Origin: Penicillus capitatus
Taxonomy: Eukaryota; Plantae; Chlorophyta
Assembly: GCA_965649825.1 (NCBI GenBank)
Contig: OZ287695.1
Span: 496,001 to 560,000, forward strand
Reading direction: 5' to 3'
DNA length: 64,000 nt
Made by a program: the position numbers and the translations under genes
Shown: positions 675 through 37,295 of the stretch, piece after piece
Numbering within the stretch: position 1 is the first letter of the stretch
Layout: the number at the start of each line of letters is the position of its first letter
Notes under the pieces: model-generated
What the model was told of the DNA's origin: nothing
Database searches by the model: none
Seen by the model: the letters and a program-made list of their open reading frames with translations, nothing else

Positions 675-770
675 AGCTCGAACGCAAAGCGGAAGCCTGC
701 TGCGTGGAAAACTCGCAGCTCGAACGCAAAGCGGAAGCCTGTTGCGTGGAAAACTCGCAGCTCGAACGCT
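675..770 (+). repeat. 42-bp tandem repeat, about 2.3 copies, just upstream of VWA paralog A
   Basis: agctcgaacgcaaagcggaagcctg(c/t)tgcgtggaaaactcgc starts at 675 and 717; a partial third unit starts at 759. Confidence 0.92.
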
Positions 771-6262: not shown

Positions 6263-7642
6263 TGGTTTCGGAGCGGCAAGCTTCGTTCATTCGTCAAGGA
6301 CGGGGTATACTCCGATTAGCCCGCCTTTTGTTGTGAGACACTTGCTTTCATGCCCAGCTCGTGGTGTGACGTTGTTGACCGACCCAAAACGTGGGGCTTG
6401 CAGTCTGCGGTGTGCTCGAGGACAATGATTAGTGAAGGTGTGTATGGTTTTCGCTGGAACTATAGTTTTACCTGTTTACTGTCTTGAACGTTTGCACGTG
6501 CGCAATTGACGAGAGGGGTCAGAAAAGCCAGATGATAGCAAAGGACACAAATGTTTAGGATTGATGCAATGCAGAGGCCTATGAACACTCAAGTGATAAT
6601 GTTGGCGTTCTTATGTTAGGAAATGTTGTGACAGTCCGAGAGAAACACTGAAATGCGCAGCGAGATGAGGGTGTCGTATTATTTTGCAAAGACTTAGGAA
6701 CGTGTTGGCACAAAAGTCTTTCAAGGCATTCGGTATGAACACCGATATTGATAGAGGAAATGAAGGCCCTAAGAGCATGCACAAAATTATGATAGAACGC
6801 GGAAAGCAGTTACTCCAAAAGAATCTCACAATGGCAAAATTCTTCACGTAGTGCAATGTACAGATGCTTTAAGAAGACAGGTCGACAAGGCACATCAGAA
6901 TTCGAAAACGGTCGAGCTCACACAAGAAATGATCTTACTAAATAAGAGTCGTCGGAGGGAGAGAGAAAAATAGAGCAAGGAAAACGCGAAGAGTGAGGAT
7001 AATCCCGCGGGATCGGAGAAAAGACGAAGATGGAAGACCTTCATTTCAAGCAGACTATCTAAACCTGCCGAAAGGGTTATAACTTTCGAACGTCGTGAAG
7101 ACGCAGTTCGTTGTTTCCGCATATGTTTCATCTGCTGGCGGAAGCCATATGACATCTTACCGGTTGTGCTTTTTTGCGATTCGTGGTTCTATATCCAAAC
7201 GGTTGGTTCACAAGTACCAAAGGCGGCCTTGTAGTCTACTGCTCTGTATTTTTTGGTTTTATCGCTTGGATCATTCTCAGGTTCAGCTCCATATGAGAAG
7301 GCGTCACGATTATTTCTCTCGCTTTCTTCAGCAAGTGGTTTCGGATCAAGGCCACAAACCACACTCCTTTCATAAACTTTTCCTCGTCGGTGATTCTCCT
7401 GTTGCAGCATCATCTTACCTTGACGTCGAAACAAGCTCATTATCCTCCGTTTGCAAAATGCCGATGTGACACCAGCATTGCAAAGCTGGCTCATTAATCT
7501 AGTCGAGACGAGTTCCATCAGAGATCACGAACGTCACGTTGATGTGACTACCGTCACGCAGCATCTGTTACGGCCGCGAGATAAAGGAAGACAATCCGGC
7601 CACACGCGAGTTAAAGAACAGCAAGAGAGTAGAATATATTGA
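6263..7642 (+). pseudogene. Possible decayed LTR-retroelement remnant (PBS-like motif plus a stop-riddled frame)
   Basis: CA-a-TGGTTTCGGAGCG at 6260-6275 is the same 13-mer as the Gypsy PBS at 34321-34333. A mostly open frame at about 6850-7642 has scattered stops. No recognisable domain. Confidence 0.25.
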
Positions 7643-10083
7643 AAAGAAAGTGGACAGTGGAAAAGCAGTGACTCAGTCTGTTCGGATCTTTGGTCGTCTA
7701 TCACGATCAGCCACCTATCGACAGATCGCCGTTTCCTCTCAGAAAACAATCCAGTTCTTACCCTTGCTGAATTGAAGTTGCTGTGTGACGTACCTTTGTA
7801 CGGGTACGCGTATTCTGTCGCATTTGCTGTACGGTTGACTTATATATCGCTTATGTATTTTGCAAGAAGGCTGCGTTAAAATTGTCGAGCGAGCAGAGTT
7901 TCACGGATCGTCGTTTTAGAGACTCCGTCACTTTGCAGGTTCTTAATAGTCATACCTCCAGAACTAAGAGTTTCACCCACCACAGCAAATTCTCCGACGT
8001 GCGATTCCTGTCTTAACAAACAAAGAAAAACTGCTCGAAACGGTAGGCTGTGTTTTCCACCCTCGGGTCGCCGATATCTCTTCTTATCCAACTCACCGGC
8101 GCGTTTCGCTCGACCTAGTACTTGCGCTTCGCATGGCGTTCACGATTCTTTAAACAGGAATTCGTTCGCATATGTCATTCCCCATGACGACCACCGCGAT
8201 CTCTCATGCCAAGAAACTTCCTCCTCTAGCCTCGGCCTTTACTGACACCGTCGAGACCGCCTGGGTATCCCTGCATCAAAACACTGACTGCCTCATGTCT
8301 TGACATAAAAAGCACGGCGGGTCCATTTCCAGACACAAAAACGCAAAAGTTTCCCCGAAGGCGCCGCCTTACGCGCGAGATCTGCGGCTTCAGCGTCTTC
8401 ATTCGCGCCGCGCTGAAAAATATCTTCCCCTCTCCGTCTTCCTCTCTCGCATCTTCTGCCAACGCACTGGACGGTAACTACTCCGCATCGTTAAACGCAT
8501 TTCCCTAACCAGACGACACGACACCTCCTCGATGCTCTTTTTCAATCGGCGGTAGTATTCCGTATCGACATTCCTCGCCTACACATCCGTCTCTTAGAGC
8601 ATATTCCGAGATCACACCATCACACCTTTCTCTGCAGTTCTTCCCACGTCTCCATGTATCTCGAGAGCGTCGTCGAATGTCTGGCGTCACTGCCTGTTGA
8701 CTCGTACCACGGCATGGTGGACGTTTTACATGTGGTCATTTGCTTTGTCGTTCATTTGCCGCGTCCAGCCACGCTGTCCTTAACGCATTCGCAAACGCAT
8801 TCCGTCATTCGTCTTGTCTTGACTCGCTACGTCGAGCACGACACGTCCAGGAGGGCATTCACCGGCAATAGGGTTCGCTGACTTGCATTTAACCGTCGAC
8901 GAACGCGTATTTCATGTTTCGCTCGTTCCCGCTTCATTCATGTCCGTATTCCCTTTTACTAGGGTCGCTCGAAAATAGGCATCGCACGAAGCGCACTGTG
9001 TGTTGAAAATGGGCTTGGCTCCATTGAATACGCCACTTCATGCGAACCCTCGGTCCAGGCGACCGGCCAATGCGGGAATCAACAACACATCGATACCGAT
9101 GCCTGGACCTTCGCAGCAACCCCGACGACGTACGACACGGAAAATCTCGAAACGGACGCACGTGTCTTTGTGAAGTGATGAGCCCGACGTCCGACGAAGC
9201 AACGAGTCCCAGAGCGACAGAGAACATGAGTTCCTACAGTCCCACGCACAGAACCTTATCGACGCCGACCGATTTCGGTACCTCTCCCTCCTTTTCACCC
9301 CCTCTCCCCAAGCAGAGCACCTTTTCAGCTGATAAAGTCGTCGAGGATGTGTTGGATGATGCGTCTGAGGAGGAGGTCGACGAATCGATTCTTCTGGGTC
9401 ACGAACTCTGGGCGGCATTGGCCAGTCGTCCTTTCGAAGAAAGGTCGATGCTTCACCGGCCTGATGGGACGTGTAAAGATCTGTGCCTCCAGGAGCGGCT
9501 TGGGATGGAAGGGATGGCTCGGTGTTGCTGCAGTGAGTGTGGTCTGCGGAAGTGTGCTCATGATCGCGGGAAACGCACGGAAGGTGCCGTGCGATGAGAA
9601 AGAGGGTCCCTCTTACTGTCTACAAGATCGCCCCTATCATTGATACCGATCATGCGCGAAGGGGAGCAGCTTCATCGCTGCGGCCATGATGGCGGTCCCG
9701 GGAATCATGCATGTACGTCTGTTGATTTTTTGTTTTTTGTTCTCTACCTGAATGGCAGCGAAAGGATGTTTCTATCGGAAGATGCCGCGACGGGAGTCTG
9801 GATGTTGTACAGTTCCGTTTCACCCGTGAAGCTTTTTGTCGCGACGGATGGCACCTTCATGTCTTGCCCAGGCCCAAATTTACATACACAGCACTTTGTC
9901 AGTATTTGACGTTCGGAAGCAATGCATGACGCCATCGTCGCTTCTTTGATTGGTGGTGCATTGATATGCTCCTGATGTGCTAAACGACAAACTGCCAAAG
10001 ATCGTTTATGTAACGGAATATCATTACCAGTAACGCCATCTCGTTCGGTGTGACACTGACAGGCAGATCACGCGAGCGACGTC

Positions 10084-10568
10084 ATGGCGGCGGCAATGAC
10101 GACGACACCCGGTGGCGATTCTTTTCGCCGTTACCTTGAGGAATCTGGCGCCGTCGACGTGATCTCTACGGGTACGGCTATCGTCGAAACGGCGACGTCG
10201 TCGGTCAACGGGATGAAATCTGTAGCGCTGGCGTCGTTGTATGAAGAGGAAGAGAGGCCGGACAATGCCATTGAGTGAGATCTCATTGCGCCACGCAAAT
10301 TGACGACATGTGGAAACACGGCAATGACAGTTTCTTGAAAGAGCAATTGGGCGCACCGACGGCGCAAGATTACGCGAAACTCGAAGAAGAGAAACGCCGT
10401 CTCGAACAGGAGCTCGTCGACGCTCGGACGCGCATTACCGACCTCGAGACGCAAGTGCGATCCATACGCAACAAAATTTAAAACAAAACGCCGCTGCCAA
10501 CGCAGCTCGACGAAAAAAGAGAATGTCCGCCGCCATCCGAATCTCCATCCGACCAACCAAGTCCATAA
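10084..10568 (+). CDS. MYCBP: c-Myc-binding protein (MYCBP/AMY-1) homolog, about 4 exons
   Basis: Spliced product FRRYLEESGAVDVISTALASLYEEEERPDNAIDFLKEQLG followed by a coiled coil; matches the family pattern FRRYLEKSG...LVALYEEPEKP..ALDFLK..LG. Confidence 0.85.
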
Positions 10569-10609
10569 ACACCGCGTCCTCACGCGTTTGCTCTCTCAAG
10601 CAAGCGCCA

Positions 10610-12650
10610 TCAATGTTTGGACATCCCGGGCGACTGAAGGGGTGTGAATCGCGGCTTCTTTGCCTTCAGGATGTTGTACGTTAGCCAGTAATTGAAGAGC
10701 ATGACCTTGGCGTTGCGCAAGATCGATGCTTCGACGGTTATGTTGTCGAATCCAAGCCACGACAAAACATCGTCGCCGTTTTTCATCATCGCGCGTTCTT
10801 TGCCCGAATCGTCTTCGCCGAATTCCACTCCGGAGAACTCGTTAATGCACATCCCTTGAAAGCCATTCTGAATCAGTGATGCATTGGGCACCCACTTCAG
10901 CGCTTTGGCCGTGCTGTGCGTGGCTTTGAATTGGCCGCCGAATACGATAAACAACAACATGACCATGGGGCCCATGCTCATCGCCACGTCCGTGTTCGGC
11001 GCCAGTCCGCCGACCGAGAGGCCGAGCGCCGCACTGGCAAAGGACTCCACCAGCACGATGCCGATGAACCTCGAGGCACGGGTGTGTGACGGATGGAGTC
11101 CAGCCATTGAGTAGAGGATCGTGCCGAAAGTGCACGACAGCAAAACGCCGACCGGAATCTCCGACAGAATCTTGGCAAAGAGATAAGGCAGCACGCCATA
11201 CGCTTTCTTGGCGCGTTCCCGCGTCACGATTGTCTGCTCGGACGGGAAAACGTTGAGCGTCTTGACGAGCGACGACATCGCAGCATTCACCGCCGTCAGC
11301 TGCAGCAATCCCACACGATCTTGCACGGCTGAGGCCACGAGCTTCGTCCGGTAATAGATGCTTCCAAAGATCAAGGCGGATCCAACGTTCATACCCAGAC
11401 GGGCGACGTTTGTCTTCTTATCACGGCGCGCCTGTTTCCAAGAGCGACCGAGGAGCAAACGAAAATCGCGTAGCCAGCTGGAGCGACGCGTAGATGTCGC
11501 GCCTACGGTTACGCCGTTCGGCACGATCTCTTTGTTCGTCGGAGCTGGTGGCTTGAACTCTTCGTGCCGGTGACGGTCCCATTCCCGAATGAGCTGCTCG
11601 ATGCGCTTCTCTGAGAGCTGGAGTGCATCGGGCGAGGAGGTATCCAACGAGATCAAATCTGCAAAGTACTCGGCGGGGTTGTAGTGATCCGGACACATAT
11701 GGCCGAGCAATGCAAAGTACCCCATCGCCCGTTCGGCTTCACCGCAGTAGACGATCTTGCCGTTCGCCATCAAGACGAGATCGTCAAAAAGTGAGAAGAC
11801 ACTGCTGCGGGGTTGGTGGATGGTGCAGATGATGGTGTGCCCGTCGTGAGCGAGGCGTTTGAGTGCACTCATGACCTTCTCGGCCTGAAAGGCATCGAGT
11901 CCCGTCGTTGGTTCATCGAGAAACATCAAGACGGGCGAATTGAGCAATTCGCACCCAATACTTAAGCGCTTCTTCTCGCCGCCACTCAATCCACGCGTCG
12001 AGGCGTCGCCGATGTACGTGTCGGCGCAACTGGCCAGACCGAGCTTGTCGATGAGGGCCGTCACCAGACGATTGCGTTCGGCGATGGACATGTCGGGCGG
12101 CAGACGCAGGGCGCAAGCCATCGTCAGTGTCTCGCGCAGCGTCAGCTGAGAGTAGAAGAGATCTTCTTGCTGGACATACGCCTGCCGAATGGCGTCGTCG
12201 GTCGTCACCGAGATGTCGTTCATCTCGATCCTCCCCGTGAACTTCATCTTCGCTGAGAAAGGGACCTGACGGGCCAGAGCGTTGAGGAGGGACGTCTGTG
12301 TGTGAGAAAGAGTGAGAGAGGTGATGTGACAGGTGTTCGTATACTTTGCCGGCGCCCGATGGGCCCATCACGGCAAGGAGACGACCAGGATGCGCGACTC
12401 CGTTGACGCCATCGAGGATGTGACGTGTCGTCGTGCCCTCTCGTGTCTTCTGTTCGAGATCGAGTCGCAGATCCGTCCATCTGAGTGTGACCCCCGATTC
12501 GGCAGAGGTTGCGAGGTCGACACCATCTTTTGCCTCATCACGTCGTCGTCTGAAAAGACCCTTGATGGCCTTCGTCCCGCAATACGCGGCGAAAATCGGC
12601 AGCTGATAATTCGAGGAGACGATCGCCGCGCTTCCGAGCAAAAACTCCAT
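10610..12650 (-). CDS. ABCG (White-type) half transporter, plant ABCG7-like
   Basis: Walker A GPSGAGK, signature LSGGEKKRLSIG, Walker B FLDEPTTGLD, TIHQP, then an ABC2 membrane domain. One intron near 12300-12345; the start could lie further upstream. Confidence 0.93.
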
Positions 12651-13112
12651 CCTCAGAAATGTAGGTACGTTCGGTGCGACACGAAATCCTGATCGATCGA
12701 TCGATCGGACGAGATGCGATGTGATGTGACGTCCACAGTCCAAGACAAAGACAACAAAGAAGAATGCGCAGTCATAGATACAAAGGAAGCCAAAAACGAA
12801 TAAGAGATGGTGTAAGAGTGCGTCACGGTAGTTGTTGAGTCCGTCATCATCATGACCATCATCAAGCTGTCGATTGAGAGCAATAAAAAATCGTGATCGA
12901 CTGGAACAGCATCACATCATATTCAAGCTTTAAATGTGCACGTATGTGTGAGAAGGAGAGACCATGTGTGCCTCATTAAGTCTTCTAAGGGAAAGGTCAA
13001 CAGGAAAGAGGGTATTCATGCAATACCTCCCTCCGATGGATCTCGACAACGCGTTTCTTTCCCACGGCAATGTAACAAAGAGCGGATCGATGGCGATACG
13101 TGGTGCTCCGTT

Positions 13113-15974
13113 TTAGAGCAACGCACAGAATTGACGATAGAGATAGCACGGACGGCATCTCTTGCCGGCTCTCAGTGTACAGCTCCATGCCATTCCTTGC
13201 TTCCCATACTGTCCAGCAGAGCTCGGATGCAGAATCCTGGCCAACAGTTCCAAACCGTCGATCAACCGAGGACCCGCCATCGAAAACAGTTTGTGATCAC
13301 AGACGTACAGCTGACCCGTTTTCATGGCCGGCATTCCCCACCACCCCGGGAGACTTGCTAACTGTGCGAGTTCCTGCTTGGTCTCTTCCCACGATGCCGC
13401 TGCCAAGATCATGACCTCAGGTTCCATGGCCTTCAGTTCTTGCCATGTCATGCGCTGCGGTGCATGACCAGGTCTGGCACCCAGAGGCTCGCCACCTGCT
13501 AAGGATACCATTTCTGGAATCCAGTAACCGCCGATCATGAGTGGATTCAGACAGGTGAGCACCACCACCTTCTCCACAGGAAAATCCGATGCCACCAATG
13601 TGCCGATTCTGGCGACTCTGGCGCGCAGACGGTCGACGATTTTGGACGCCGCGTCCTCCACTCCAGCCGCTTCGGCAATTTCGAGCATAAACTCCAGGAT
13701 CTCACTCAAATGACGGCACTTGTGTGCCAGTATCGTTGTCGGTGTCGTTCGGCACAGACCGGTAAAGGATCCCTTACGTGCCTTGAAGATCTGTTCCATT
13801 TTCGATCGATCTGGATCGCCGCCGTCTTCCACCACCACCAAAGCCGGCTGCTCCATTCTGAGGAATTCCTCATTGATGTCAAAAGCGCTCTCCTGACGGC
13901 ACCAGTAGTCTTTGAGTTTCAGTTCCAGTCGACTGTCGTCTAGGTGCATCGCCTCGAACTTTGTCGTGGCGACGACGGTTCGGCCCGATTGAACGTCGGG
14001 GGGATAGGTGCAGATATTGGTCACGCCTACCAAACGTTTCTCCAGTCCGAGGGCGCAAATCATTTCGACGCCTGTGACGGACATCCCAACGATCTTTCCA
14101 TCGTCCACGCTATCCTTAAGACCCACAGCAGGTGTCACATCACTCGTCACAGTACATGATTTGTGGGGGAGGTTTTTCTTGGTCGAAAACATATCCGTCG
14201 GTAAATCCGGCACCGGTACTTCGCAAGCAAGCACCGGAATCTGAAAAGGCGTCTTCTTCTGCGGGAAGTCTTGGCTGTGGCGAGGGAAGGAGGCGTTGGA
14301 GACATTCCATTGCTTGCAGACTTTCTCCTGCGGCATGCCGGAATCGAGGGACGGCATTTTCTGGCTGACGAAATTGCGTTTGGCGCTTTCAAAAGCATTC
14401 ATCTTCATCCAGCTGCGGTGCATAGCTTCTTGACACTTGAGAAGATTCACGCGACGGCATCGATCGACAAAAGACGGTGCCAGTCTTGGATTGCTGGCGA
14501 ATTGGAGATGGACGTAACTGGCGAGGACGGCGTTGCGTGTGTAGCCCTCCTTCGCGACGCCGTGTTTCGAGATCTCACCCGACAGACGGTAGGTATAATC
14601 GAATTCCAGCTTCTCTCCAGCTTCCACGCTTCCCCACGCCGAACGCACGATCTCTTGGACGATGTGACTGCCGTGGCAGATGTGGCCTTTGGCCTGTAAA
14701 CCGGACGTGAACAGCGGGCAGTTGTTGAGAATCTCCACCGATACGTAGCCGCTTTCGTCTGGCGATCCTTCAGACATGCGTGTGCGGAAAGGAAAGACGC
14801 CGACCATGTTGTACGGGGGATACTCATTGAGTTGTTCAATGCTGCGTGAGAGATAGAGCAATCCGCCGCCTTCGGCATAGATCACACCACCCGATGCCGC
14901 AAAGGCACGAATCGACGCCATGAGTGCGGCGTTCTTAGACAGACGCGCGGCGTGGAGTTCCGGATGACCACCTCCCAAGTAGATTCCCGAAACGTCTTTG
15001 GGCAAACGAACATCTTCTAGGGGGGAAAAGAAAACAAGTTCTGCTCCAGATCTTTCCAACATCATGAAGTTCCTATGCATCACACATAGCAAAAGAGTGA
15101 GATGGTGGGCACGGGGAAAAGAGTGAGAGTGCGTACTCGTGATAGTAAAAAGAAAAAGCAGCATCTTTCGCAACAGCAATTTTGACAGCGTTCTGCGCAA
15201 CGGGCAGCGTCGCATCATCGTCCGGGCCTTTCGGCACCTTCGCCAGCATCGAAACCTCGATGCACTTTGAGGTATTGAGTTCCTGTGCCATTTTGGAGAG
15301 GTCGTCCAAGAAGGTCTCCATCGATGCACGATGTCCATCTCGCGGCGTCTTGGGTGTGATATCCATAGCCGTAGCGATGGCAGCATTCTCCGGTAAGAAT
15401 CCCAGACTCTGTGCCTTGACGCCCACTTTTTCGAACGTCTTCGTCAGCATGGCGGCGTGATCGGCATTGTGGACACGATTGAGGACGATCCCTGCGACTT
15501 TGACTTTCTTATCGAACGTTTCGAATCCCTTGACCACTGCGGCGCAGCTCTGCCTCATGGGTGCGGCATCGACGACCAAGATAACGGGCGAGGCGAGAAA
15601 ACGAGCCAGTTCAGCTGTACTCCATTCGTCCGTATCGCTTCGACGGTCAAAGAGACCAGCGCTGCCGTCCACGACGGCGACATCGCACTCGGCGCCGTAG
15701 CGATGGACACATGAGAGCAGACAGTCCCTCGGTACATTCCAGGGATCAAGATTTACCGCCATGCGTCCCGTTGCGGCCTCAAACAAATCGTTCTCGCTAA
15801 ACCCTGGTCCGAATTTGAACGCTTGAACCCGAAGGCCTTGTTTCCTGTGCAGATGTGACCATCGCGATGCGCCGAGGAAAAGAGGGTGCCCAACCTGAGG
15901 CCATTCATAATGGAGATCGAGACGGTGGTGGACCCGGCGCCGCTGTGGGTACCCGATACGACAAGCACTTTCAT
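13113..15974 (-). CDS. cobB: CobB/CbiA (cobyrinate a,c-diamide synthase)-like pseudoenzyme fused to a C-terminal BtuF/TroA-type binding domain
   Basis: MKVLVVSGTHSGAGSTT...VQAFKFGP..LDP, VVDGSAGLFD, GIVLNRV, IAVAKDAAFSFYY, YLGGGHPEL, IYAEGGGLLYL, ASYVHL; then KIVGMSVTGVEMICALGL..RLVGVTNICTYPP, IGGYWIPEMVSLAGG, FSMAGPRLIDGLELLARILHP. Three short introns. Confidence 0.9.
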
Positions 15975-16233
15975 TTTGTTGCGTCGGTCGGTTTGTTCGT
16001 TTGTTCAGCTATGGGTTGGTACGTTCGTCTATTGTGGACTGTCTGTATGGACGATGTGGCTGGACGGCGACGACGGTGTTGATAAGAATCGAAAATGAAA
16101 ACGCGAAAAACGCAGAGATAGATGCATGCGCGATTTCGGATAGACACCTTGCTGTTAACAAAATGCAAACGTCACATCATTCTCGCCAACGTTTGGTACG
16201 ACTAGATGGATGGCTGAACATCGAGACATGCGT

Positions 16234-18227
16234 TTAGAAATCGCCGAGATTCCACATATTGTCCGGGTCCATCTTTGACCAGGTCGATCGATCTTGCTCG
16301 AGCTCCGCTGGCGTCAGGAGGCATTCTTCGAGGGCGGATCGAATAGCAGGGAGGTGCGCCGCTTCGCCGATGACGACGATCTGCTGCTTGCGATCGCCAA
16401 AGACGGAATGCCAAGATGCGTCCGTTTCTGCCCAGAGCTCTTCGGGAAGCATCGACGAGCGCCACGTTTCGATCATATTGAACTGAACGGAGCGTCCGGC
16501 AGTAGACCAGTTGAGCTTGACATCGAAGTACGTGGCTATGTAGAAAAACCCTTTCGATCGGTATGCTTTGAGCATAAGGGAATCTTCTGCCATCATCAAT
16601 TTCTCATAGTTATCGTCATCGTCATCGTCCTCTTCTTTCTCTTCTTTCTCATCCTCCTCGTCGTCCTCATCTCCGTCCTCTTCATCGTCCTCATCTTCCT
16701 CCGTCGCTTCTTCGGTAGCTTCATCGTCCTCGTCGTCTTCAATGTCGCCAAAAATAAGTCGGTGGAGACGACCGGGATGAAAAGGCAGATGAGAGGTGAA
16801 GACGAAACTGCCGATGCCGAACTCTTCTGTTTCAGGGGTATGAGGCGAGATGAGCTCCGTGGCGAAGCCTTCGAATTCCGCTGCCTTCTTTGGGTCAAAC
16901 CGTCCGGTATGCATGACTTCGTTCAGGTCGATCTGGGCCCGAATGGAGGACAGCTGTTTCGCCGTTGGATTGAGATGCTTGAGCAGACCCTGGATCTTCT
17001 GAACCTCAGGCTTCGAGATGAGGTCACACTTATTGACGATCAGCGTGTCGGCGAATTCCACTTGCTCGATCAGGAGGTCCGTGATGCTACGGATGTCGCC
17101 ATCGTACGCAGACATATTGCGATCCTTCAACAGCTGGTTCTTCTTGATCTCTTGCATAAAGAGACTCCCATCGATCAGCGTCACCTACAGTGCACGTGCT
17201 GGTGGGGCAGAGGTGTCGGGGAAGGACCATGTTGTCGATTTTGAAGAATTCTTTCAGGGAACGCCCTTCGGCGTCTTGAGCAGCAAAGCTCGCTGCGACA
17301 GGCATCGGCTCACTGATGCCCGTCGCTTCGATCAGGATCGCGTCAAAGCGTTTTGCACAGAGCATCTTGGTCGCGGCCTAGTCACACTTTCTCACACATT
17401 GTGATCCGCGTGTCAAGTCGCTGACTTTGATGAGATCGCCGCGTAAAGTACAGCACACACAGCCGTTTGTGAGTTCTACCAGCTCCTCCTCTACTTCGGA
17501 AAAAGAGTGACTTTGCTGCACGAGATGGACATCGATATTGATTTCGGCCATGTCATTGACGAGCACGGCTATGCGCTGGCCATCAGCGGACTCAGAGAGC
17601 AAACGGGTCAGCAATGTCGTTTTCCCTGCGCCGAGGAATCCAGAGAGCACGACGACGTCGATGGGTTGCTCAACACCTGTCACATCAAACTCATACACAG
17701 ATTTTTTGCTGACGTGACCTGCAGCGCGGATCTCCTCGAGAGCATCGCGAATCAGTGTCGGATCCTCGTCATCATCATCAGGCGCCACGCGCATAGCGGC
17801 GATGCGAGATGTCATATAATCCCAAGTGGGATTCTTTGCGTCCACGGCGCGTCCTTGAGAGATGATTTTCTCTGCCTCGTCGAAGAGATTTTGCTGCACG
17901 AGTACCAGAGCTTGACGCTGATAGCCGCCACCCCATTCGGGTCGCATCTCCACCACACGCTTCGCATCGGCCAGCGATAAATCGTGCTTGCCTTGCAAAT
18001 CGTACGCCATCGACCGGTCGCACAAAATGCGCGTCACCTGTTCCGCGTCAACGCCAAGCGTCGTCGCCCGCTCCAACGCAGCCGAATACATCTCCACCGC
18101 CTCGTCCCATCGCTCTATTTCGCACAGCGCGTCACGCATCAGCCGAAAGGCGGTGCGAGGGTGAACCTGTGACGAAGAGAATGTCGCCTTTCTTCTTCAG
18201 CGACTCCAGAGAGTCGGCGTCGCTCAT
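16234..18227 (-). CDS. TPR-COG0523 (CobW/ZigA/YciC family) G3E GTPase metallochaperone, copy 1
   Basis: MSDADSLESLKKKGDILF..TPR; LSGFLGAGKTT, VNDMAEINID, GCVCCTLRGDL, EATGISEP, EQVEFAD, NKCD, CobW_C (RSKG, GDRKQQIVVIG). D/E-rich insert at about 16605-16745. Three introns. Confidence 0.92.
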
Positions 18228-18293
18228 GTTCCAGAAGGCCAAAGAAATGCGCAGCGCAATGGATCATTATGAAGCGACGTGGCCCACAAGACG

Positions 18294-18879
18294 ATGTTCG
18301 TCCTGCGTCGAACAGCAGGACGCTATGTTGCCCCATTCACCTCGCTTGTCTCCAGTCCTCTCTCGATCCCTCACGCCACTGCGCTCTGGCAAACGACTGG
18401 GGGGACACTCGGCGGCGGCGGCGGCGCCGAAGACAGGCGACACTTGTCTGAGATGACGCGCGAGGCGGTGCTCGGGTGGAGTCCCGTCGAGACCGTCGCC
18501 GTTACACTGGACCGTCTGCATCATGCGACGCAGCTGCCGTGGTGGGCGATGCTTTCGCTCACGGCTATCAGTCTGCGAGCCACGATGTTTCCCTTCACCA
18601 TCAAACAGGCGAGAGATGTGCGTCTCTTCTGTGCTCTGTATCCGATCTCCGCCGTGGACGCAGATCCAGTCGACGGGACCCACGATGAGCTGCATCTCTC
18701 AGGCGGTCAGAATTGTCCGCGCCAAGAAAAAGAGTGAGAAGAATACGAAATGGTCCTTGGTGGATGCAAAGAATGTGCTCGGTAAATTTCGAAAGCTGGC
18801 AAAGTACTCCGATGCACCCCATCCGGCTTGGGTGATCTGTGCCCCTCTCATCCAAGTACGCACCATCTGTGTTCACCTG
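18294..18879 (+). pseudogene. Disrupted OXA2-like insertase, copy 1, 5' part (the interrupted intron resumes at 34694-34752)
   Basis: Near-identical to 37296-37878. Interrupted in an intron by the LTR element; the 3' half is deleted. Confidence 0.9.
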
Positions 18880-18998
18880 TGTAGACCAAGCTTACCAAGG
18901 TAGTAACCAGCAGCTCCAAAAGTTGAACTGCAATCATTCTCTTACAACAGAATATCTGATGACAAGAATGAAGAAAACATTTATCTTTCGTCTCGACA
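18880..18998 (-). repeat. 3' LTR, internally deleted (119 bp)
   Basis: Matches both ends of 34334-34693 but lacks 242 bp between two gttacc sites. A purine-rich GGGGAGCG abuts it on the minus strand. Confidence 0.9.
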
Positions 18999-19099: not shown

Positions 19100-21921
19100 G
19101 GATTCTAAGCATTGAAGAATGAGGTATGGCCCAGACCAAGGAGCTTGCAGCTTTGACAGGATTTTCCTAGGACGTTCGACAGAAGGACTTGTATTCCAGC
19201 TCTCAGTTTGGGCCCTTTTCTACGGACAGCTTCACGTTTTTCATGCCATTTGAGGCGTTCTGTACGTGTGTTTGCCCTAGCAAATTCCTTTCGTTTTGTC
19301 CATTCTGCAGGATCCAATAAATCGCCCTTGTAATCGAGGCCAAATCTGAGTTCTTTCGGGAAGCAACGCGTGACCCTGTGAACAGAGGAATTGATTGCGT
19401 CCTGAGATCTCTACACGAGCTGATTCCAAGGGTTGTGCGTTGCCATCTGTAAACGTCGAATCCTGCCCAAGAGCGTCTGAATCGTTCTCTCGACAAGACC
19501 GTTGGATGAGTGAGGATACGATGCGCTGAATCTGAGATCCATCCCACGATGCTTGCTCCAAGCGACGAAAACGGGAGAAGTGAATTGAGAACCAGAGTCC
19601 GCCACGACCATCTGAATCTTCCTATGTTTACGTATCCAATCGTCGAGGAGTTCCTCAACTCGTTGTCGTCTGGGAGAGCGCACTGTGCGTGTCTCCACCC
19701 ATCGGGAGAAGTAATCGACGGCAACCAGAATACATTTCGACGGAGCTCTGGTTTGTTGTGACAACGGTTCCAATACGTCGATATTAACCACGTCTGAGAC
19801 TTCACTGGCTTCTACGAATCCCAGATCTTCTCTGAATCTGCGTTTTGCACAATTGACAGGCCTCACAAGTCTTGGACACGTGCTCAGCAAATTTTTTTTG
19901 CCGCGGGACCATCCCACGGAGTCTTGGAGAGAGATAGTTTCAAGTTTGACGCCGAATAGTGTCCCCGCGCATGAGTGTCTTCTATTCACTCCCTGGCTTG
20001 CCCGTCAAGTTCCTGTTGAGCCGCCACTGGGTAGGCACAGACTTCAGACGACGACGCAGATTCGTTGCTTTCTTCATCGCTGTAGACATACGACTCTTGT
20101 AACGACGCTGTTTCACAGTGATCGTCCTCCATCTCACTCTCCATCTCACACTTGTTGTCTTCGCCGTCATACATCAAGAATTTCTGGCGCGAGAGAAGGT
20201 CCGCCAGTTGGTTTTCCGAGCCCGCTTGAAATCTTACTAAGTGATAATCTCTCAGGACCTCTTCCATTCTTCTCAGCATGAGCGTACTCTGGCTCTTCCA
20301 ATTCCACATTTTGGCAGACGCCCAGCTGTCTGTGAAAACGACAATCTGCCGTCCTAGGGCCAGGTGACGAAACGTTCTCAACGCTTGCGGCAGCGCATCC
20401 AATTCGGCTTCTGACGAGTGAGCCCACGGTTTCTTGTTCCTCCTGCTCATCATTGCGACAACGTTGCCGCTTTTGTCCATTAACGCCGCACCATAACCGG
20501 CAGCAGAGGCATCTACCACCATCTTCAACGACCCACTCCCATTCCAGTAACCAAGCTGTTGAAGTTGGTCTTGACAGGAGCGCAACAGACACTCCCAGAA
20601 TCGTCCAAACTCTGTCGTCTGAAATCTCTTGGCTTCCGCCTTTTTCCATGGTTCTAATGTGCGAAGTATGACGTCTCGACGCCAGGAATAACGATTCAAT
20701 TGTAACAACAGCCCTTCGACCGTTCTCAGATCCTTTGCACATTTTGGCTTGGGCAGATCGTTAAGCTTCCTTATCAAACCGTTGCTCGGTCTGATTCCTT
20801 CTGGGCATAGTTCGGCACCAAGGCACTCAACGGAATCGGTGCATCACTTGGATTTCTCGGCATTTAGCCACCACCCATCATGACCGAGCTCAGAGAAAAC
20901 AGTGTTTAAGTCCCGCAAGTGTTCCTCTGGGGTGTCTGATCCCAACATCAAATCACCAACATAGTAAAACAGAACACTAGATCTGTTCAGTTTTTTCACA
21001 ATTCGGGACAAAGTTATAGACAGAGCTTTTTGGAAATGTCCCATGCTCGATACCCAGCCAAAAAAGCATGTCTTGTATTGAAAGAATCGTGACTTGAAGA
21101 AAACCCCAAAAAAAGTCCGAATCTCTGGAGCCAGAGGCACCTGCATGAATCCCTTCCTCATATCGATGACAGACCAGACCGTCTTCTTCGGCATGTGTCC
21201 CAATAAACACATCCTGTCTATGGGAATTCCTTGCACCGAAACAGTCGCAGAATTCAGCGCTCGGAAGCTCATAACCACTCTTTTCTTGTTTCCTTTCTGT
21301 GGCACGGGTATGAGTGGCGTCAGGATGGTGGGAGGCCTTGCCACTTCTTCAACCGCACCGATCTCGACGAACTCCTGTATCTGGGCCTGAATCTGATCCT
21401 CCACGGCAGGTGCCAACGGACGGCATGGAATCGCTGAGCAGTCGACGTAATCTTTGAGTCCGAGATCGTCCACACAGTAGTGCTTCACACCTGGGAACTT
21501 CCTTTCGCACAGACGCGGGTATTGCCTCCAGAGGTCGTCCATCGACCGCTCTTCGTCCTCAGCATCATCGATGTCTGACACTTCGCCGTTTTCCTCTCGC
21601 GTTACTGTGTTCAGCTTCTGGCGACGCTGTCGTTCCAAAGCGTCTCTCGGTAAGAGACTCGACCCGCCGACTTTCTTCAGAACCACTTGCTCGTCTGCCT
21701 TGACTTGGAAGGCTGCCATCATGAATTTGCTTCCCAGCTGTTCAGGCCGGTCGCCTGGATTCCTCAGAGACATTTTGATCCTTTTTCCAGCTCCTTTAAT
21801 GCACGGCTCGATCATCACACTTCCTGCGTTGCCAGTGGGCATCAACGCGGCGTCTCTGTTCAAGATTCGACACGGTAGTTGGAATCTCACGGATGATCTG
21901 GGGCGAGAAAGGCGGACTTCC
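19100..21921 (-). pseudogene. Gypsy pol: RT, RNase H and integrase (frameshifted, with stops)
   Basis: RT VIDMRKGFMQVPL..FFG..YYVGDLML (YVDD changed to YVGD); RNase H VVDASAAGYGAAL..ELDAL..VFTDS; integrase NIDV..VDYFSRW..VADSGSQFTS..SNGLVER, and PWSGPY. Confidence 0.92.
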
Positions 21922-24194
21922 ATCTTTCCTATTCTCCGTACGGCACTTACGTTCCGCCCGCTAATTTCCCTTACTGAACGCCGGTGTCCGCACACGAGAA
22001 CAACGCACGATGCAGCCTTCCGGCTCGACGTCCGAAGGCCCTGGCACCGCCCCCGACACCGTGCGCACGGCGATAGCCCAAGCGGCCCACACGGTTCGGT
22101 ACCGACGCGATCTGCGCCGGTCCCCCGAGGTGCTCGCAGCTATGAGCAAGGACGAGCTCATACTGGTCAACGCCGCTGTCAAGGCCTGCTCCACTCAAGT
22201 CGCCGCCACCTTGGACTCCGCACAGCTCGTCGAGAAGATCAACGCCTACCCGACTGCCCACGAGCGTCGAGATGCCGAGCAGCTCCACCTCATTAGCCTA
22301 CACGAGCGCTCCAGAGAATCGCTTCTGCTGGCTCCCGAAAGGCCCATCTACGACACGAAATCCCCGGTGCCCTGTCTCTCGCAGACCGTTCGTTTCCAAG
22401 AGAAAGTTACTCCCTCAGATCTCCTGTCAATATTCACTGTTGTATTGGCTTCTTCATAAGGGTCATCATGAAGATGAAGGGAAGATGATGCGCGGAACAT
22501 AAGACGTCGCTGTCGCCGTTTGATAGGTCTGCTTGCTCCTCTTCGCCAATGTACGTCTCGGAAGGCCCGGGGTCACAAGGTCGTCGGAGCGAAGGCCACG
22601 AAGTCGATGCCTCGGTCCGCGGAGCTTTGCTAGGTGTTATAAAGTCCAACGTTGTGGACGATCTGCTCCGCGCCCCGCTGGAGGAGCTACGCGTGTTCCC
22701 CTCGACGGAACTGGTCGAGATCCTCCTGGAAAGTTGGCTATTGCGGTCCGTACGGAATATACGCGGGTGTACTGTCTTACTCGGTGTCGTCGTCATAGAG
22801 ACAGAGAAAGCCGAGATGAAAGGTTAACAACAACAAACAAAGGGCAAACAACACAGCGTATCCTGAGCCTCTTATTCAGTCTAGGCGATGTGACATTCTA
22901 GGCAGATGATTCATCTTACTTCTACGACCAAAGAAAAGCGTCCCTTGAAGCCCAAGGGTCCCTTCTGACATGACAGCCAGCATCCGTGTCAAAGAATGGC
23001 GCAATTTTGATGGAGCGTTGATGGGACGGTAATTTAATCAGTGGCATTTCTGTCACTTGGTGTTTCGTGCCTTTGGCCGCACGACGTGACCGTCGCCGCT
23101 GAGTCACGATGAGTAGGGATAAATCGCGATGACTAGGAGTGAGTTCTTGTGAAGTTTGCGCTGAAGTTCTTTAAAGCTTCTAGAATCTCATTGGGGACTC
23201 ATCCTGGAAATTCACATGTTTTCCCGCCATCGCGTCAGGGACCAAGTATTCAAGCAAGAGTCGGACACATAAAACATCTATCAGTTTACGTTTACCTCTA
23301 CGTCTGTGTCTACGAACACTTCACTCGTCAAAAACATCGGTTGTTCTTGCTGTAATAAAATTGTCTCTTGCCTGCACTTCTTGCTTGGTTCTCGACATCC
23401 TAGCCCTGCCTGGTGTCATCTTATTCTAAGACTTCCGTCGCTTGTGAGATGAGTCAACACGGAGACGATTCCCGGTCTCTCACTCCTCCCCCTGAAGTCT
23501 GAGAGCAATATGGAAGCGAAAGCGGCATCCATGTCAACGTTAGTAATATCTGGGACGAAGTGGAGAATGAGAAAGCCAGCAAGCAATCGTCACGCGTGAA
23601 CTTCAGCTAGACAGCCGAGTCCGGACTGGATGGCGAACCGCACAGGGAAACTGACGGGGATTCGACAGACTCTGGCACGACGCGAACGCGCCAACGCGTG
23701 TGCGGAGATAAAGGAACTGACTAGAGTCAAAGCTAAGACTGATTACATGGTGAGTCCAGTCGGTTAAGTACCCTCGGCACCCGCGGACCCCTGTCACGTC
23801 AGGAAACGGACAGCCTGTCCGGTCCGCAGGGGCCCCAACCGTTGTCCTCTACCCATCAGAAACCCTGTCCGCAATGTAGACATACATACTTAGACGAATA
23901 CATCAGAACAGTTCCCTTGTAAATACTCGGAATGACGTCAGTCCTCTCTTATGCCATCATCGTGCATGATGAGCCTTTAGCGCAACGAACGTCACCATCT
24001 GTTCAAACACATGACCCCTGTCTTCCAAGATATGCACATCGTCATGAGAATCTTAGCGACAGTTATATCGTTACAAGAGGCATGATAGCATCATGACGTA
24101 AGGCATGAATGACATCATGCATAGAAAGAATATAAAAAGTTGGTCTTCGTACAGAACAGAACTTTTAAGACTCTCCTCTACTTCGTTTCAAAAA

Positions 24195-24378
24195 CAAAGC
24201 TTCGCAGAAGTGAACGTCGTGCGGAAGCAGATGTTTCGGTTTTCCGAACCTTGAGTCTCGGCAGACGCGCGTGCCGTCAGCAACAGCGTGTGCAGCGTCG
24301 AGTTCGTCAGCGCGAAGAGAGATTTCTTCGAGAAGTATGCTTGCGCAGAAGACCGACGAAGCGCGAACTTTTTCCAAC
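24195..24378 (-). pseudogene. 5' fragment of the trypsin-ankyrin gene
   Basis: Homologous to 2715-2893. The ATG context gagaagATGttc has become gaaaaagttc, the intron acceptor is altered, and the copy is truncated before IVGG. Confidence 0.85.
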
Positions 24379-34693: not shown

Positions 34694-34752
34694 ATCTGTC
34701 ACCTCACAGGCAGATTCTGTCACTCCAGATTCCTGCCTTTCTCACATGTGTG

Positions 34753-35160
34753 GTCTATAGTGTGAGCAGATATACCCAGCGATCAACGAAATCTTACTGT
34801 ACACGGCAGTCCTGTCGAATGCAGTCCTGTAAAGGGAGGGAGGGGGTCAGTCGATGGTAGACACGGCAGGGTAAGGTGGCGGCCTACCTGCATCGGCGGT
34901 ATGGTGATGATTGTTTTTCTTCTTTTCTTCGATGTCGTTCAAAACGTGATCGATATCCGAAACGTGCCCTTGGTTCAAACACTTGAGGACGGCGGCGACG
35001 TGCGGCATGACGTGACGATTGAGCTCCTGGACATTGAGAGGCTCTTCCCCCTGCAGATTCACGTAATCGACCAAGAAGGCAAACGCCACGACGCTACGGC
35101 GCTTTGCGGTACGGGTGCCCAAAATTTGGTGAAGAGGTACTAGAGGCAGGACTGCAAGGT
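34753..35160 (-). pseudogene. Internal ORC5 fragment (copy 1)
   Basis: Matches 39364-39769; joined to the OXA2 remnant by a deletion of about 1.43 kb. Confidence 0.9.
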
Positions 35161-35245
35161 TTGCTGTTAACAAAATGCAAACGTCACATCATTCCCGCCA
35201 ACGTTTGGTACGACTGGATGTTTGGCTGAACATCGAGACATGCGT

Positions 35246-37229: not shown

Positions 37230-37295
37230 GTTCCAGAAGGCCAAAGAAATGCGCAGCGCAATGGATCATTATGAAGCGACGTGGCCCACAAGACG

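What the first reader, a model, noticed from the sequence alone, without database searches (positions are those of the whole stretch)
13113..15974. Doubly inactivated CobB/CbiA fused to a BtuF-like domain in a eukaryote: candidate intracellular B12/corrinoid sensor or chaperone
Eukaryotes do not make cobalamin, yet this intron-containing gene keeps the whole CobB architecture. The P-loop Lys is Ser (GAGSTT, codon TCC at 15930-15932, three changes from AAR). The glutaminase nucleophile is Gly (AEGGG vs AECGG, 14868-14870) and HEFH reads HICH. A full BtuF/YvrC-like binding domain (about 13200-14100) is appended, with no signal peptide. An intact frame with both catalytic sites lost points to a pseudoenzyme repurposed to bind corrinoids. 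Similar fusions may exist in other algae; I could not search.
Basis: partly seen in the sequence, partly recalled or inferred. Interest (0 to 1): 0.85.

Follow-up and report, generated by a model that had tools for sequence, protein, structure and literature searches.

The report
Dead CobB–BtuF-like fusion protein, conserved
A green seaweed gene encodes a vitamin-B12-pathway enzyme fused to a B12/heme-type binding domain; it has lost its catalytic residues yet is strictly conserved, and it belongs to a widespread, unstudied eukaryotic protein family.

Summary
A three-exon gene on the minus strand (13113-15974) encodes a 915-aa protein with three parts: a CobB-type ATPase domain, a CobB-type glutaminase domain and a Peripla_BP_2 (BtuF/heme-binder fold) domain. 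There is no leader peptide. The P-loop Lys is Ser (TCC, 15930-15932) and the glutaminase Cys is Gly (14868-14870).

It is not decay. The same substitutions are fixed in a monophyletic clade of Bryopsidales green algae (Caulerpa x2, Bryopsis, Ostreobium, plus environmental relatives). dN/dS is about 0.05 in every domain.

The GPDxxD and PERHLGL motifs of CobB are gone, and so are three of four invariant Cys of the binding domain.

The fusion is ancient and widespread. It occurs in many green algae, a liverwort, Selaginella, a haptophyte, oomycetes and Chromera, mostly with catalytic motifs intact.

The C-terminal domain descends from a leaderless prokaryotic BtuF-like family. That family lies in cobalamin-riboswitch operons beside canonical BtuF.

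So this is a conserved pseudoenzyme from a corrinoid-linked lineage. The "B12 sensor/chaperone" role is plausible but untested, and some evidence weighs against it.

The parts
13113..15974 (-). Whole gene: 3 exons, 915-aa CobB-like / BtuF-like fusion protein (stop codon at 13113-13115)
15895..15974 (-). Exon 1 (residues 1-27, includes the P-loop)
   Evidence: same exon end in L091
15845..15894 (-). Intron 1, GT..AG, 50 nt
   Evidence: position conserved in L091; absent from the mRNA-like contigs L002/L003
15137..15844 (-). Exon 2 (rest of the ATPase-like domain and start of the GATase_3 domain)
15073..15136 (-). Intron 2, GT..AG, 64 nt
   Evidence: position conserved in L091
13113..15072 (-). 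Exon 3 (GATase-like domain, disordered linker, binding domain, Cys-rich tail)
15367..15962 (-). CbiA/DTBS-like ATP-binding domain, residues 5-186 (interrupted by intron 1)
   Evidence: Pfam PF01656, 54.9 bits
15930..15932 (-). Codon 15, TCC = Ser, at the P-loop Lys position (GAGSTT)
   Evidence: K in 20/20 prokaryotic CobB; S/T/A in the dead clade
14490..15183 (-). GATase_3 (CobB/CobQ-type glutaminase) domain, residues 248-457 (interrupted by intron 2)
   Evidence: Pfam PF07685, 100.4 bits
14868..14870 (-). Codon 331, GGC = Gly, at the nucleophile Cys position (AEGGG)
   Evidence: C in 20/20 prokaryotic CobB; G in 8/8 of the dead clade
14673..14684 (-). H393-I-C-H396 (consensus HEFH): both His retained, F395->C is clade-specific
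14109..14357 (-). Disordered, fast-evolving linker, residues 502-584
   Evidence: pLDDT below 50; dN 0.71 against 0.09-0.13 in the domains
13293..14075 (-). Peripla_BP_2 (class III solute-binding fold, BtuF/heme-binder type) domain, residues 596-856
   Evidence: Pfam PF01497, 58.2 bits; Foldseek TM-score (target-normalised) 0.78-0.83 to BtuF and ShuT
13809..13832 (-). VEDGGDPD (residues 677-684), which replaces the family motif TQxLCxVC; both Cys are lost
14010..14012 (-). C617, the only one of the four family-invariant Cys that is retained (NICTYP for HECDYP)
13116..13220 (-). Conserved C-terminal tail, residues 881-915, with G-K-R-C-R-P-C...F-C-A-L-L; no Pfam match
   Evidence: (dN 0.012)

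Best explanation
The gene encodes a cytosolic, catalytically dead but selectively maintained derivative of an old eukaryotic fusion protein. That fusion joins a CobB-type ATP- and glutamine-dependent tetrapyrrole amidotransferase to a leaderless BtuF-like binding domain.

Shown. The fusion arose before the divergence of many eukaryotic lineages, and most members keep all catalytic motifs. On the stem of the Bryopsidales lineage to which this alga belongs, the following were replaced: the P-loop Lys, the CobB GPDxxD and PERHLGL motifs, the glutaminase Cys, and three of the four invariant Cys of the binding domain. The new residues then became fixed under strong purifying selection.

Inferred. 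The protein can no longer activate a carboxylate with ATP or hydrolyse glutamine. It works by binding rather than catalysis, as a carrier, buffer or adaptor. The binding domain and tail are its most constrained parts. The likeliest ligand class by descent is a tetrapyrrole of the corrinoid type, but the pocket has been remodelled and the ligand may have changed.
For: - Architecture and CobB membership by score.
- Substitutions and coordinates.
- Same state in Caulerpa (two paralogs), Bryopsis, Ostreobium and environmental relatives.
- The clade is monophyletic in 200/200 NJ bootstraps, with the longest internal stem after the branch separating the bacterial outgroup (0.235).
- NG86 dN/dS for P0001 vs P0002: 0.05 overall (dS about 1.0); 0.07 ATPase, 0.04 GATase, 0.035 binding domain, 0.03 tail. 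Window vs P0001: domain dN 0.09-0.13 against linker dN 0.71.
- The replacement residues are themselves invariant within the clade (D86, G331, G681, P683, T769 and G794, each 8/8).
- Relatives are represented by intron-free, roughly 3-kb mRNA-like contigs.
- Confident fold (mean pLDDT 85.3), with the C-terminal domain matching BtuF and heme-binding proteins.
- The parent prokaryotic family of the binding domain is leaderless. It lies in cobalamin-riboswitch operons beside BtuB-like, BtuC/D-like and BtuR genes and a separate signal-peptide BtuF.
Against: - No binding or expression data exist for this protein itself.
- The binding domain has lost most residues that are invariant in its corrinoid-linked parent family, so ligand continuity is an assumption.
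- Family members persist in Selaginella and Riccia. METH was found in no land plant outside hornworts (PMC11439496), which weakens a B12-specific reading of the family.
- Foldseek cannot separate B12 binders from heme binders.
- dS between the window and its nearest relatives is saturated, so the clean dN/dS value comes from two relatives, not the window sequence itself.
- No solved CobB structure was found, so the roles of the lost CobB motifs rest on conservation only.
Confidence: 0.55

Rival explanations
1. One reading: a dedicated intracellular vitamin B12/corrinoid sensor or trafficking chaperone. The dead CobB part and the BtuF-like part both hold corrinoid. The protein hands it to B12 enzymes or reports B12 status.
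For: Both halves descend from corrinoid-handling families. The protein has no leader and is predicted cytosolic. It is strongly conserved. Ostreobium, a member of the clade, has METH and relies on external B12 (bioRxiv 10.1101/2020.07.21.211367).
Against: The conserved motifs of both putative corrinoid sites are replaced, not kept. No B12-related element or gene is linked to it beyond a generic COG0523/CobW-like neighbour, and that adjacency is absent in Bryopsis and Ostreobium. The family also occurs in plants without known B12 enzymes. The fold is equally close to heme binders.
Confidence: 0.25
2. A non-catalytic scaffold or regulator whose ligand or partner is no longer a tetrapyrrole. The burst of substitutions on the clade stem would mark a change of function, not just loss of catalysis.
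For: The dead clade has the longest internal stem after the branch separating the bacterial outgroup, followed by tight constraint. Pocket-motif replacements are fixed and clade-specific in all three domains. Other lineages lost the glutaminase Cys independently, which shows the family tolerates loss of catalysis: Riccia, Selaginella, Tetraselmis, Pedinophyceae and Flechtneria.
Against: There is no positive evidence for any alternative ligand or partner. The overall folds of all three domains are retained with high confidence.
Confidence: 0.25
3. Still an enzyme. It would use free ammonia and a non-canonical nucleotide site, or catalyse a different ligation, despite the missing Lys and Cys.
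For: The Walker-A Thr (T16), D93, D119, N149, H156 and the glutaminase H396 and GGG-PE motif are kept. The CobB equivalog model still scores above its cut-off.
Against: The P-loop Lys is invariant in all 20 prokaryotic CobB compared and in every eukaryotic member that has an aligned canonical P-loop outside this clade. D41/D44, E86 and the whole PERHLGL motif are changed at the same time. It follows from established knowledge of P-loop/DTBS-like amidoligases that loss of the Lys abolishes phosphoryl transfer.
Confidence: 0.06
4. Simple decay: a pseudogene, or a recently inactivated gene drifting neutrally.
For: Key catalytic residues are missing.
Against: The 2748-nt frame is intact, with two correctly placed and conserved introns. 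dN/dS is about 0.05. The same state is held across Caulerpa, Bryopsis and Ostreobium at 50-60% identity. mRNA-like contigs exist for relatives.
Confidence: 0.02

Closest known systems
[quoted passage not shown]
   Same: Same two-domain architecture (DTBS-like ATPase plus GATase_3). The score is above the CobB equivalog cut-off (357.9 vs 254 bits). Identity to bacterial enzymes is 31-40% over the CobB part.
   Different: P-loop Lys -> Ser and nucleophile Cys -> Gly. The GPDxxD and PERHLGL motifs are lost. A binding domain is fused at the C-terminus. The gene is eukaryotic and spliced, and no other cob genes lie nearby. The CfbB 'exception' cut-off (560 bits) is not reached (298.6 bits).
BtuF, the periplasmic vitamin B12-binding protein of BtuCDF, and the heme binders ShuT/PhuT/BhuT
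   Same: Class III solute-binding fold. Foldseek TM-score (target-normalised) is 0.79-0.81 to E. coli BtuF, 0.78 to V. cholerae BtuF and 0.83 to ShuT. Profile E-values are 1e-18 to 1e-31.
   Different: No signal peptide, and the domain is fused to another protein. It carries an insertion of about 30 residues in the N-lobe that the solved proteins lack. The window protein gave no match to the BtuF equivalog model at E <= 0.01; a prokaryotic relative scored 38 bits against a cut-off of 234.
Uncharacterised prokaryotic leaderless 'cobalamin-binding protein / iron complex SBP' family (about 300 aa; HECDYP, TQxLCxVCAV, PCGF)
   Same: These are the closest non-fused relatives of the C-terminal domain: 24-34% identity over 88-95% of it, with the same N-lobe insertion and no leader.
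   Different: The window protein keeps only one of the four invariant Cys and has lost LLPSATE, E-W and the R of SRPGPR. The prokaryotic genes lie in cobalamin-riboswitch operons, often overlapping a Diphthami_syn_2 (PP-loop) gene.
CBA1, algal cobalamin acquisition protein 1 (PMC10828217)
   Same: An algal protein with a BtuF-like predicted fold that is implicated in B12 handling.
   Different: CBA1 has a signal peptide and is associated with the ER or plasma membrane. It has no CobB part and is required for uptake. Direct sequence comparison was not possible because no CBA1 sequence was on hand.
Precedents for non-catalytic relatives of enzymes (from my own knowledge, not tested here): MMADHC/CblD in B12 trafficking, and the DTBS-like N-terminal domain of bacterial phosphotransacetylase
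   Same: An enzyme fold retained for binding, adaptor or regulatory roles. The Pta model PRK05632 gives a weak hit to residues 71-164.
   Different: Unrelated or only distantly related sequences. No evidence links their mechanisms to this protein.

Membership tests
CobB/CbiA a,c-diamide synthase | Whole-protein score above the curated NCBIfam equivalog cut-off | tested here: met
   NF002204: 357.9 bits against 254. TIGR00379: 315.3 against 261.4.
CobB/CbiA a,c-diamide synthase | P-loop GxGKT with Lys in the ATP-dependent synthetase domain | tested here: not met
   GAGSTT; S15 where 20/20 prokaryotic CobB have K.
CobB/CbiA a,c-diamide synthase | Nucleophile Cys of the GATase_3 domain (AECGG) | tested here: not met
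   AEGGG; G331 where 20/20 have C.
CobB/CbiA a,c-diamide synthase | Invariant His of the GATase_3 domain (second His of HEFH) | tested here: met
   H396 is retained.
CobB/CbiA a,c-diamide synthase | Conserved synthetase motifs GPDxxD, VEGxMG and PERHLGL | tested here: not met
   GPGFSEND, VDGSAG, and the PERHLGL region replaced by MDITPKTP.
CobB/CbiA a,c-diamide synthase | ATP- and glutamine-dependent amidation of the a and c acetates of a corrinoid | not testable with these tools
   Needs an enzyme assay.
CobB/CbiA a,c-diamide synthase | Occurs with other cobalamin biosynthesis genes | tested here: not met
   No other cob biosynthesis gene was seen among the window ORFs checked. The neighbours are a TPR-CobW (COG0523-type) gene and an ABCG7-like gene.
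BtuF (periplasmic B12-binding protein) | Class III SBP fold / Peripla_BP_2 | tested here: met
   PF01497, 58.2 bits. TM-score (target-normalised) about 0.8 to 1n2z and 5ysc.
BtuF (periplasmic B12-binding protein) | Signal peptide and export to the periplasm | tested here: not met
   The domain is internal to a leaderless eukaryotic protein.
BtuF (periplasmic B12-binding protein) | Score above the BtuF equivalog cut-off (NF002894, 234 bits) | tested here: not met
   No match for the window protein at E <= 0.01.
BtuF (periplasmic B12-binding protein) | Binds cobalamin | not testable with these tools
   Needs binding assays. The fold search does not separate B12 binders from heme binders.
Leaderless CxxC BtuF-like family (prokaryotic, uncharacterised) | Full-length similarity including the N-lobe insertion, and no leader | tested here: met
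   E-values from 1e-33 down; 24-34% identity over 88-95% of the domain.
Leaderless CxxC BtuF-like family (prokaryotic, uncharacterised) | Four invariant Cys (C30, C92, C95, C227 in P0125 numbering) | tested here: not met
   Only C617 is kept. C92 and C95 are replaced by G681 and D684. The position of C227 reads Ala/Ser (AAASW) by motif alignment.
[quoted passage not shown] | CbiA + GATase_3 + Peripla_BP_2 in one polypeptide, with a G-x-R-C-R-P tail | tested here: met
[quoted passage not shown] | Groups with the eukaryotic members rather than with bacterial CobB | tested here: met
   NJ tree on 458 columns. It nests inside the eukaryotic group, sister to Caulerpa. Only three bacterial outgroups were used.
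CBA1 | Sequence similarity to Chlamydomonas/Phaeodactylum CBA1; signal peptide | not tested
The absence of a leader here differs from the published description.

The most novel reading that the evidence does not exclude
The eukaryotic CobB/leaderless-BtuF fusion family would be an unrecognised intracellular corrinoid salvage or repair system. The same would hold for its prokaryotic counterpart, the leaderless CxxC binding protein paired with a PP-loop amidoligase-like gene in B12-riboswitch operons. In this reading the binding domain presents an incompletely amidated or de-amidated corrinoid to an ATP-dependent amidoligase. Eukaryotes would then chemically modify the corrin ring rather than only import and remodel the lower ligand. 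In Bryopsidales the enzyme would have been converted into a non-catalytic cytosolic corrinoid carrier or sensor.
Probability: 0.18. Interest if true: 0.88.

Novelty: new variant of a known kind. Interest (0 to 1): 0.66.

Why it matters
Eukaryotes are thought only to import B12 and, in some algae, to swap its lower ligand. This family challenges that view. It is widespread and mostly keeps the catalytic motifs of a corrin-ring amidotransferase, fused to an intracellular BtuF-like domain. That makes it testable whether algae, oomycetes and others chemically process corrinoids or another tetrapyrrole.

The window's gene is the extreme case. All catalytic signatures are erased, yet selection is as strong as on an enzyme. 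It is therefore a clean natural example of pseudoenzyme neofunctionalisation in the giant-celled Bryopsidales, which include reef-boring Ostreobium and the seaweed Caulerpa.

The work also exposes an unstudied cytosolic component of bacterial B12-riboswitch operons.

Tried and rejected
1. CobW neighbour as a functional partner. The TPR-CobW gene lies directly upstream, and the order TPR-CobW / CobB-like / ABCG7 is kept in one near relative, L091. It is absent in Bryopsis (L004) and Ostreobium (L005). I treat it as local synteny, not a functional link.

2. A second gene copy. The window holds a 2.7-kb duplication at 95% identity (16149-18880 vs 35161-37879). It ends 175 nt upstream of the ATG and contains only the CobW gene. 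tblastn finds no second CobB-like copy.

3. Riboswitch or other RNA elements in the window. No Rfam match reached a gathering score.

4. The C-terminal tail as a partial DUF5522. Oomycete members carry Kelch repeats plus DUF5522, but the tail has no Pfam match at E <= 1.

5. A solved CobB structure for mapping the lost residues. The PDB sequence search of the window protein returned only solute-binding proteins. CTP synthetase (rank 41) was the only match to the N-terminal half among the 50 best Foldseek hits shown.

6. CobB next to the leaderless binding-protein gene in prokaryotes. This was seen once, in archaeal-looking L009. No CobB-like ORF was found in the 80 bacterial loci, so the eukaryotic fusion does not mirror a common prokaryotic operon.

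7. Literature. Searches on algae, diatoms, Bryopsidales, oomycetes, CobB/cobyrinic acid, pseudoenzymes and PF01902/corrinoids found no description of the fusion family. The only mention is a 'CobB-like' transcript in Chrysochromulina (PMC4057078). The sample accessions are not cited in any held paper.

8. The word-index search with the C-terminal domain did not return the full-length relatives again. The exhaustive representative search was needed to see the breadth of the family.
Full report
**Observation**

The region holds a real gene on the minus strand. Reading the sequence and splicing two short GT..AG introns (15894-15845, 50 nt; 15136-15073, 64 nt) gives a 2748-nt CDS of 915 codons, from the ATG at 15974 to the stop at 13113-13115.

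- Pfam finds CbiA (residues 5-186), GATase_3 (248-457) and Peripla_BP_2 (596-856), all above the gathering score.
- The NCBIfam CobB equivalog NF002204 scores 357.9 bits against a cut-off of 254.
- Codon 15 is TCC (15932-15930) in GAGSTT, and codon 331 is GGC (14870-14868) in AEGGG. At both positions all 20 prokaryotic CobB compared have Lys and Cys.
In 'HICH' both His are kept, including the invariant H396, and the Glu is not conserved even in motif-intact eukaryotic relatives. Only F395->C is specific to this lineage.
- The protein starts directly with the first strand and P-loop, as bacterial CobB do. An in-frame stop lies 11 codons upstream, so there is no leader.

**Whose gene it is**

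- The window is part of a 613-kb contig of an ENA metagenome assembly.
- The adjacent ABCG7-like gene has Ostreobium quekettii (54%) and Bryopsis (56%) as its best named relatives, followed by other green algae and land plants.
- In a neighbour-joining tree of the CobB part, the window protein is sister to the two Caulerpa lentillifera paralogs, inside a clade that also holds Bryopsis and Ostreobium.
- The organism is therefore a green alga of or near the Bryopsidales.
- An independent genomic relative (L091, 67-72% identity) has both introns at the same positions and the same order of TPR-CobW, CobB-like and ABCG7 genes.
- Two roughly 3-kb contigs from other samples carry the uninterrupted ORF with short flanks. 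They look like spliced mRNAs of relatives at 76-77% identity.

**The family**

The fusion is neither unique nor confined to algae. The word-index search, the exhaustive representative search and the cluster look-ups place the CbiA + GATase_3 + Peripla_BP_2 architecture in these lineages:

- Green algae: Tetraselmis, an Ostreococcus cluster, Auxenochlorella, Chloropicon, a pedinophyte, Trebouxia, Myrmecia and the Bryopsidales.
- Land plants: the liverwort Riccia and the lycophyte Selaginella.
- Other eukaryotes: the haptophyte Diacronema lutheri; the oomycetes Saprolegnia and Aphanomyces (with added Kelch repeats and DUF5522); Chromera velia; and the cercozoan Flechtneria.

Most members keep GxGKT, GPDxxD, VEGxMG, PERHLGL, AECGG and the His. 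They also keep the Cys motifs of the binding domain.

The glutaminase Cys was lost independently several times: Riccia GEGGG, Selaginella GEAGG, Tetraselmis AESAG, the pedinophyte AEGTG, Flechtneria, P0196 and P0200. The P-loop Lys is lost only in the window's clade, where it is S, T or A.

**Not decay**

- The dead clade is monophyletic in 200 of 200 bootstrap NJ trees. It has the longest internal stem in the tree after the branch separating the bacterial outgroup (0.235).
- Nei-Gojobori estimates for the two closest relatives of the window (P0001 vs P0002; dS about 1.0) give dN/dS of 0.05 overall. By region: 0.07 ATPase-like domain, 0.04 glutaminase-like domain, 0.035 binding domain and 0.03 tail.
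- Between the window and P0001, dS is saturated. Even so, dN is 0.09-0.13 in the domains against 0.71 in the linker of the same gene.
That criterion is not met.

**How far the loss goes**

I listed every position that is at least 85% conserved in 20 prokaryotic CobB or in 23 prokaryotic relatives of the binding domain. The motif-intact eukaryotic members keep most of them. The dead clade has replaced the following:

- CobB part: K15; D41 (partly); D44->E; H48->F; E86->D; M89; G94; the whole PERHLGL motif; L265->F; C331->G; F395->C.
- Binding domain: LLPSATE->MSVTGVE; E616; D618; Q678->E; C681->G; C684->D/G; E769->T; W770->C/G; L794->G; R861->M.

Many replacement residues are invariant within the clade (D86, G331, G681, P683, T769 and G794, each 8/8). 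The pattern is a burst of change on the stem followed by tight constraint. That fits a change of function rather than simple loss.

**Origin of the C-terminal domain**

Its nearest non-fused relatives are prokaryotic proteins of about 300 aa, at 24-34% identity over 88-95% of the domain. They share an N-lobe insertion of about 30 residues that solved BtuF and heme-binding proteins lack. They have four invariant Cys (HECDYP, TQxLCxVCAV, PCGF).

They are truly leaderless. In about 30 of 65 loci the longest possible ORF begins two residues before the MRIxSLLPSATE motif.

At least 586 genomic matches exist across many phyla. Clustering the neighbours in 80 loci gave these counts:

- a Diphthami_syn_2 (PP-loop) gene in 19 loci, usually directly adjacent;
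- a TonB-dependent receptor in 18;
- a FecCD permease in 11;
- DUF6580 in 9;
- BtuR/CobO in 6.

All 8 receptor-containing loci scanned carry a cobalamin riboswitch upstream on the same strand. In total 10 of 28 scanned loci do.

In complete operons the order is: riboswitch, receptor, PP-loop gene, leaderless CxxC protein, BtuR, permease, ATPase, and then a second, signal-peptide-bearing binding protein without the CxxC motif. The leaderless protein is therefore an extra, intracellular component of B12 uptake/salvage operons, not the periplasmic BtuF.

I found no description of this family in the paper library.

**Structure**

AlphaFold2 on a 61-sequence alignment gives mean pLDDT 85.3. The three domains are confident and the linker (502-584) is disordered.

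Foldseek matches the C-terminal domain to class III solute-binding proteins. These include V. cholerae and E. coli BtuF (TM-score normalised to the target 0.78-0.81) and the heme binders ShuT, PhuT, BhuT and RhuT (0.73-0.83). The fold says 'tetrapyrrole-type binder' but cannot choose between B12 and heme.

No solved CobB turned up in either PDB search. Among the 50 best Foldseek hits shown, the N-terminal half matches only CTP synthetase, which has the same amidoligase-plus-glutaminase layout.

**Interpretation**

Shown:
- a real, spliced, eukaryotic gene;
- membership of a broad fusion family;
- lineage-specific replacement of the catalytic and pocket motifs in all three domains;
- strong purifying selection afterwards;
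- a corrinoid-linked genomic context for the prokaryotic parent of the binding domain.

From established knowledge: CobB/CbiA and CfbB amidate the a and c acetates of corrinoids or Ni-sirohydrochlorin using ATP and glutamine (PMC7242693). Loss of the P-loop Lys and the nucleophile Cys abolishes such chemistry.

Inferred: the protein acts by binding, as a carrier, buffer or adaptor, in the cytosol. A corrinoid-type tetrapyrrole is the likeliest ligand by descent.

Two facts weaken a B12-specific reading:
- The binding domain's own conserved motifs are gone in this clade.
- The family survives in Selaginella and Riccia, although METH was found in no land plant outside hornworts (PMC11439496).

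Ostreobium, a member of the dead clade, does have METH and depends on external B12. B12 use in the clade is therefore not excluded.

**Comparison and novelty**

The protein passes the score test for CobB but fails the P-loop, nucleophile and motif tests. [quoted passage not shown] It has the BtuF fold but no leader and no BtuF-level score.

CBA1, the known algal B12 acquisition protein with a BtuF-like model, is secreted or ER-associated and has no CobB part (PMC10828217). I could not compare the sequences.

In the searchable literature I found only a passing mention of a CobB-like transcript in a haptophyte (PMC4057078). I rate the finding a new variant of known kinds:
- an uncharacterised eukaryotic fusion family;
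- within it, a fully pseudoenzymatic, conserved Bryopsidales form.

**Limits**

- The tree is distance-based with three outgroups.
- The clean dN/dS value comes from relatives rather than the window sequence.
- 'Intact' means motif-intact, not assayed.
- The absence of an intact paralog in Bryopsidales is judged from search hits only.

Noticed in passing
L038, L043, L049, L046, L034 (about 7000-14300 in each); L026 2329-6788: Bacterial cobalamin-riboswitch operons contain a leaderless BtuF-like protein with four invariant Cys. It is usually start/stop-overlapped with a Diphthami_syn_2 (PP-loop, amidoligase-like) gene, and it comes in addition to a canonical signal-peptide BtuF. The pair appears to be an undescribed cytosolic component of B12 uptake/salvage.
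   Followed up: partly
Proteins P0186 (Riccia), P0192 (Selaginella), P0184 (Tetraselmis), P0290 (Pedinophyceae), P0206 (Flechtneria), P0196, P0200: The glutaminase Cys of the eukaryotic fusion family was lost independently in several lineages while the P-loop Lys was kept. These include land plants, where METH was found only in hornworts.
   Followed up: partly
window 16149-18880 and 35161-37879: A 2.7-kb direct duplication (95% identity) carries a TPR + CobW/COG0523 GTPase gene. Its proximal copy ends 175 nt upstream of the CobB-like ATG. A further 0.4-kb repeat lies at 34752-35160 and 39364-39769.
   Followed up: partly
window 10610-12743 (-); L091 8526-10514: An ABCG7-like half-transporter lies directly downstream of the CobB-like gene. 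The order TPR-CobW / CobB-like / ABCG7 is conserved in a relative at about 70% identity, but not in Bryopsis or Ostreobium.
   Followed up: yes
window 19986-21995 (-): Retroelement remnant: reverse transcriptase (RVT_1) and RNase H-like ORFs.
   Followed up: partly
window 725-2893 and 24195-26368: Inverted repeat of about 2.2 kb at 86% identity. Its content was not examined.
   Followed up: no
window 26335-29832 (+): Two adjacent ORFs with von Willebrand factor type A domains. The first has a hydrophobic N-terminus and a Cys-rich end.
   Followed up: partly
window 61227-63907 (-): EF-hand plus ferric-reductase FAD/NAD-binding ORFs, i.e. a respiratory-burst-oxidase-type NADPH oxidase gene split by an intron.
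   Followed up: partly
L009 3539-7553: In an archaeal-looking contig, a leaderless BtuF-like gene lies two genes away from a stand-alone CobB (CbiA + GATase_3) and an Asn_synthase-domain gene. This was the only prokaryotic CobB/binding-protein proximity seen.
   Followed up: partly
Proteins P0017, P0018, P0197, P0198 (oomycetes); P0210 (Chromera): Some family members carry extra C-terminal modules: Kelch propeller plus DUF5522 in Saprolegniales, and a PH domain in a 2426-aa Chromera protein.
   Followed up: partly
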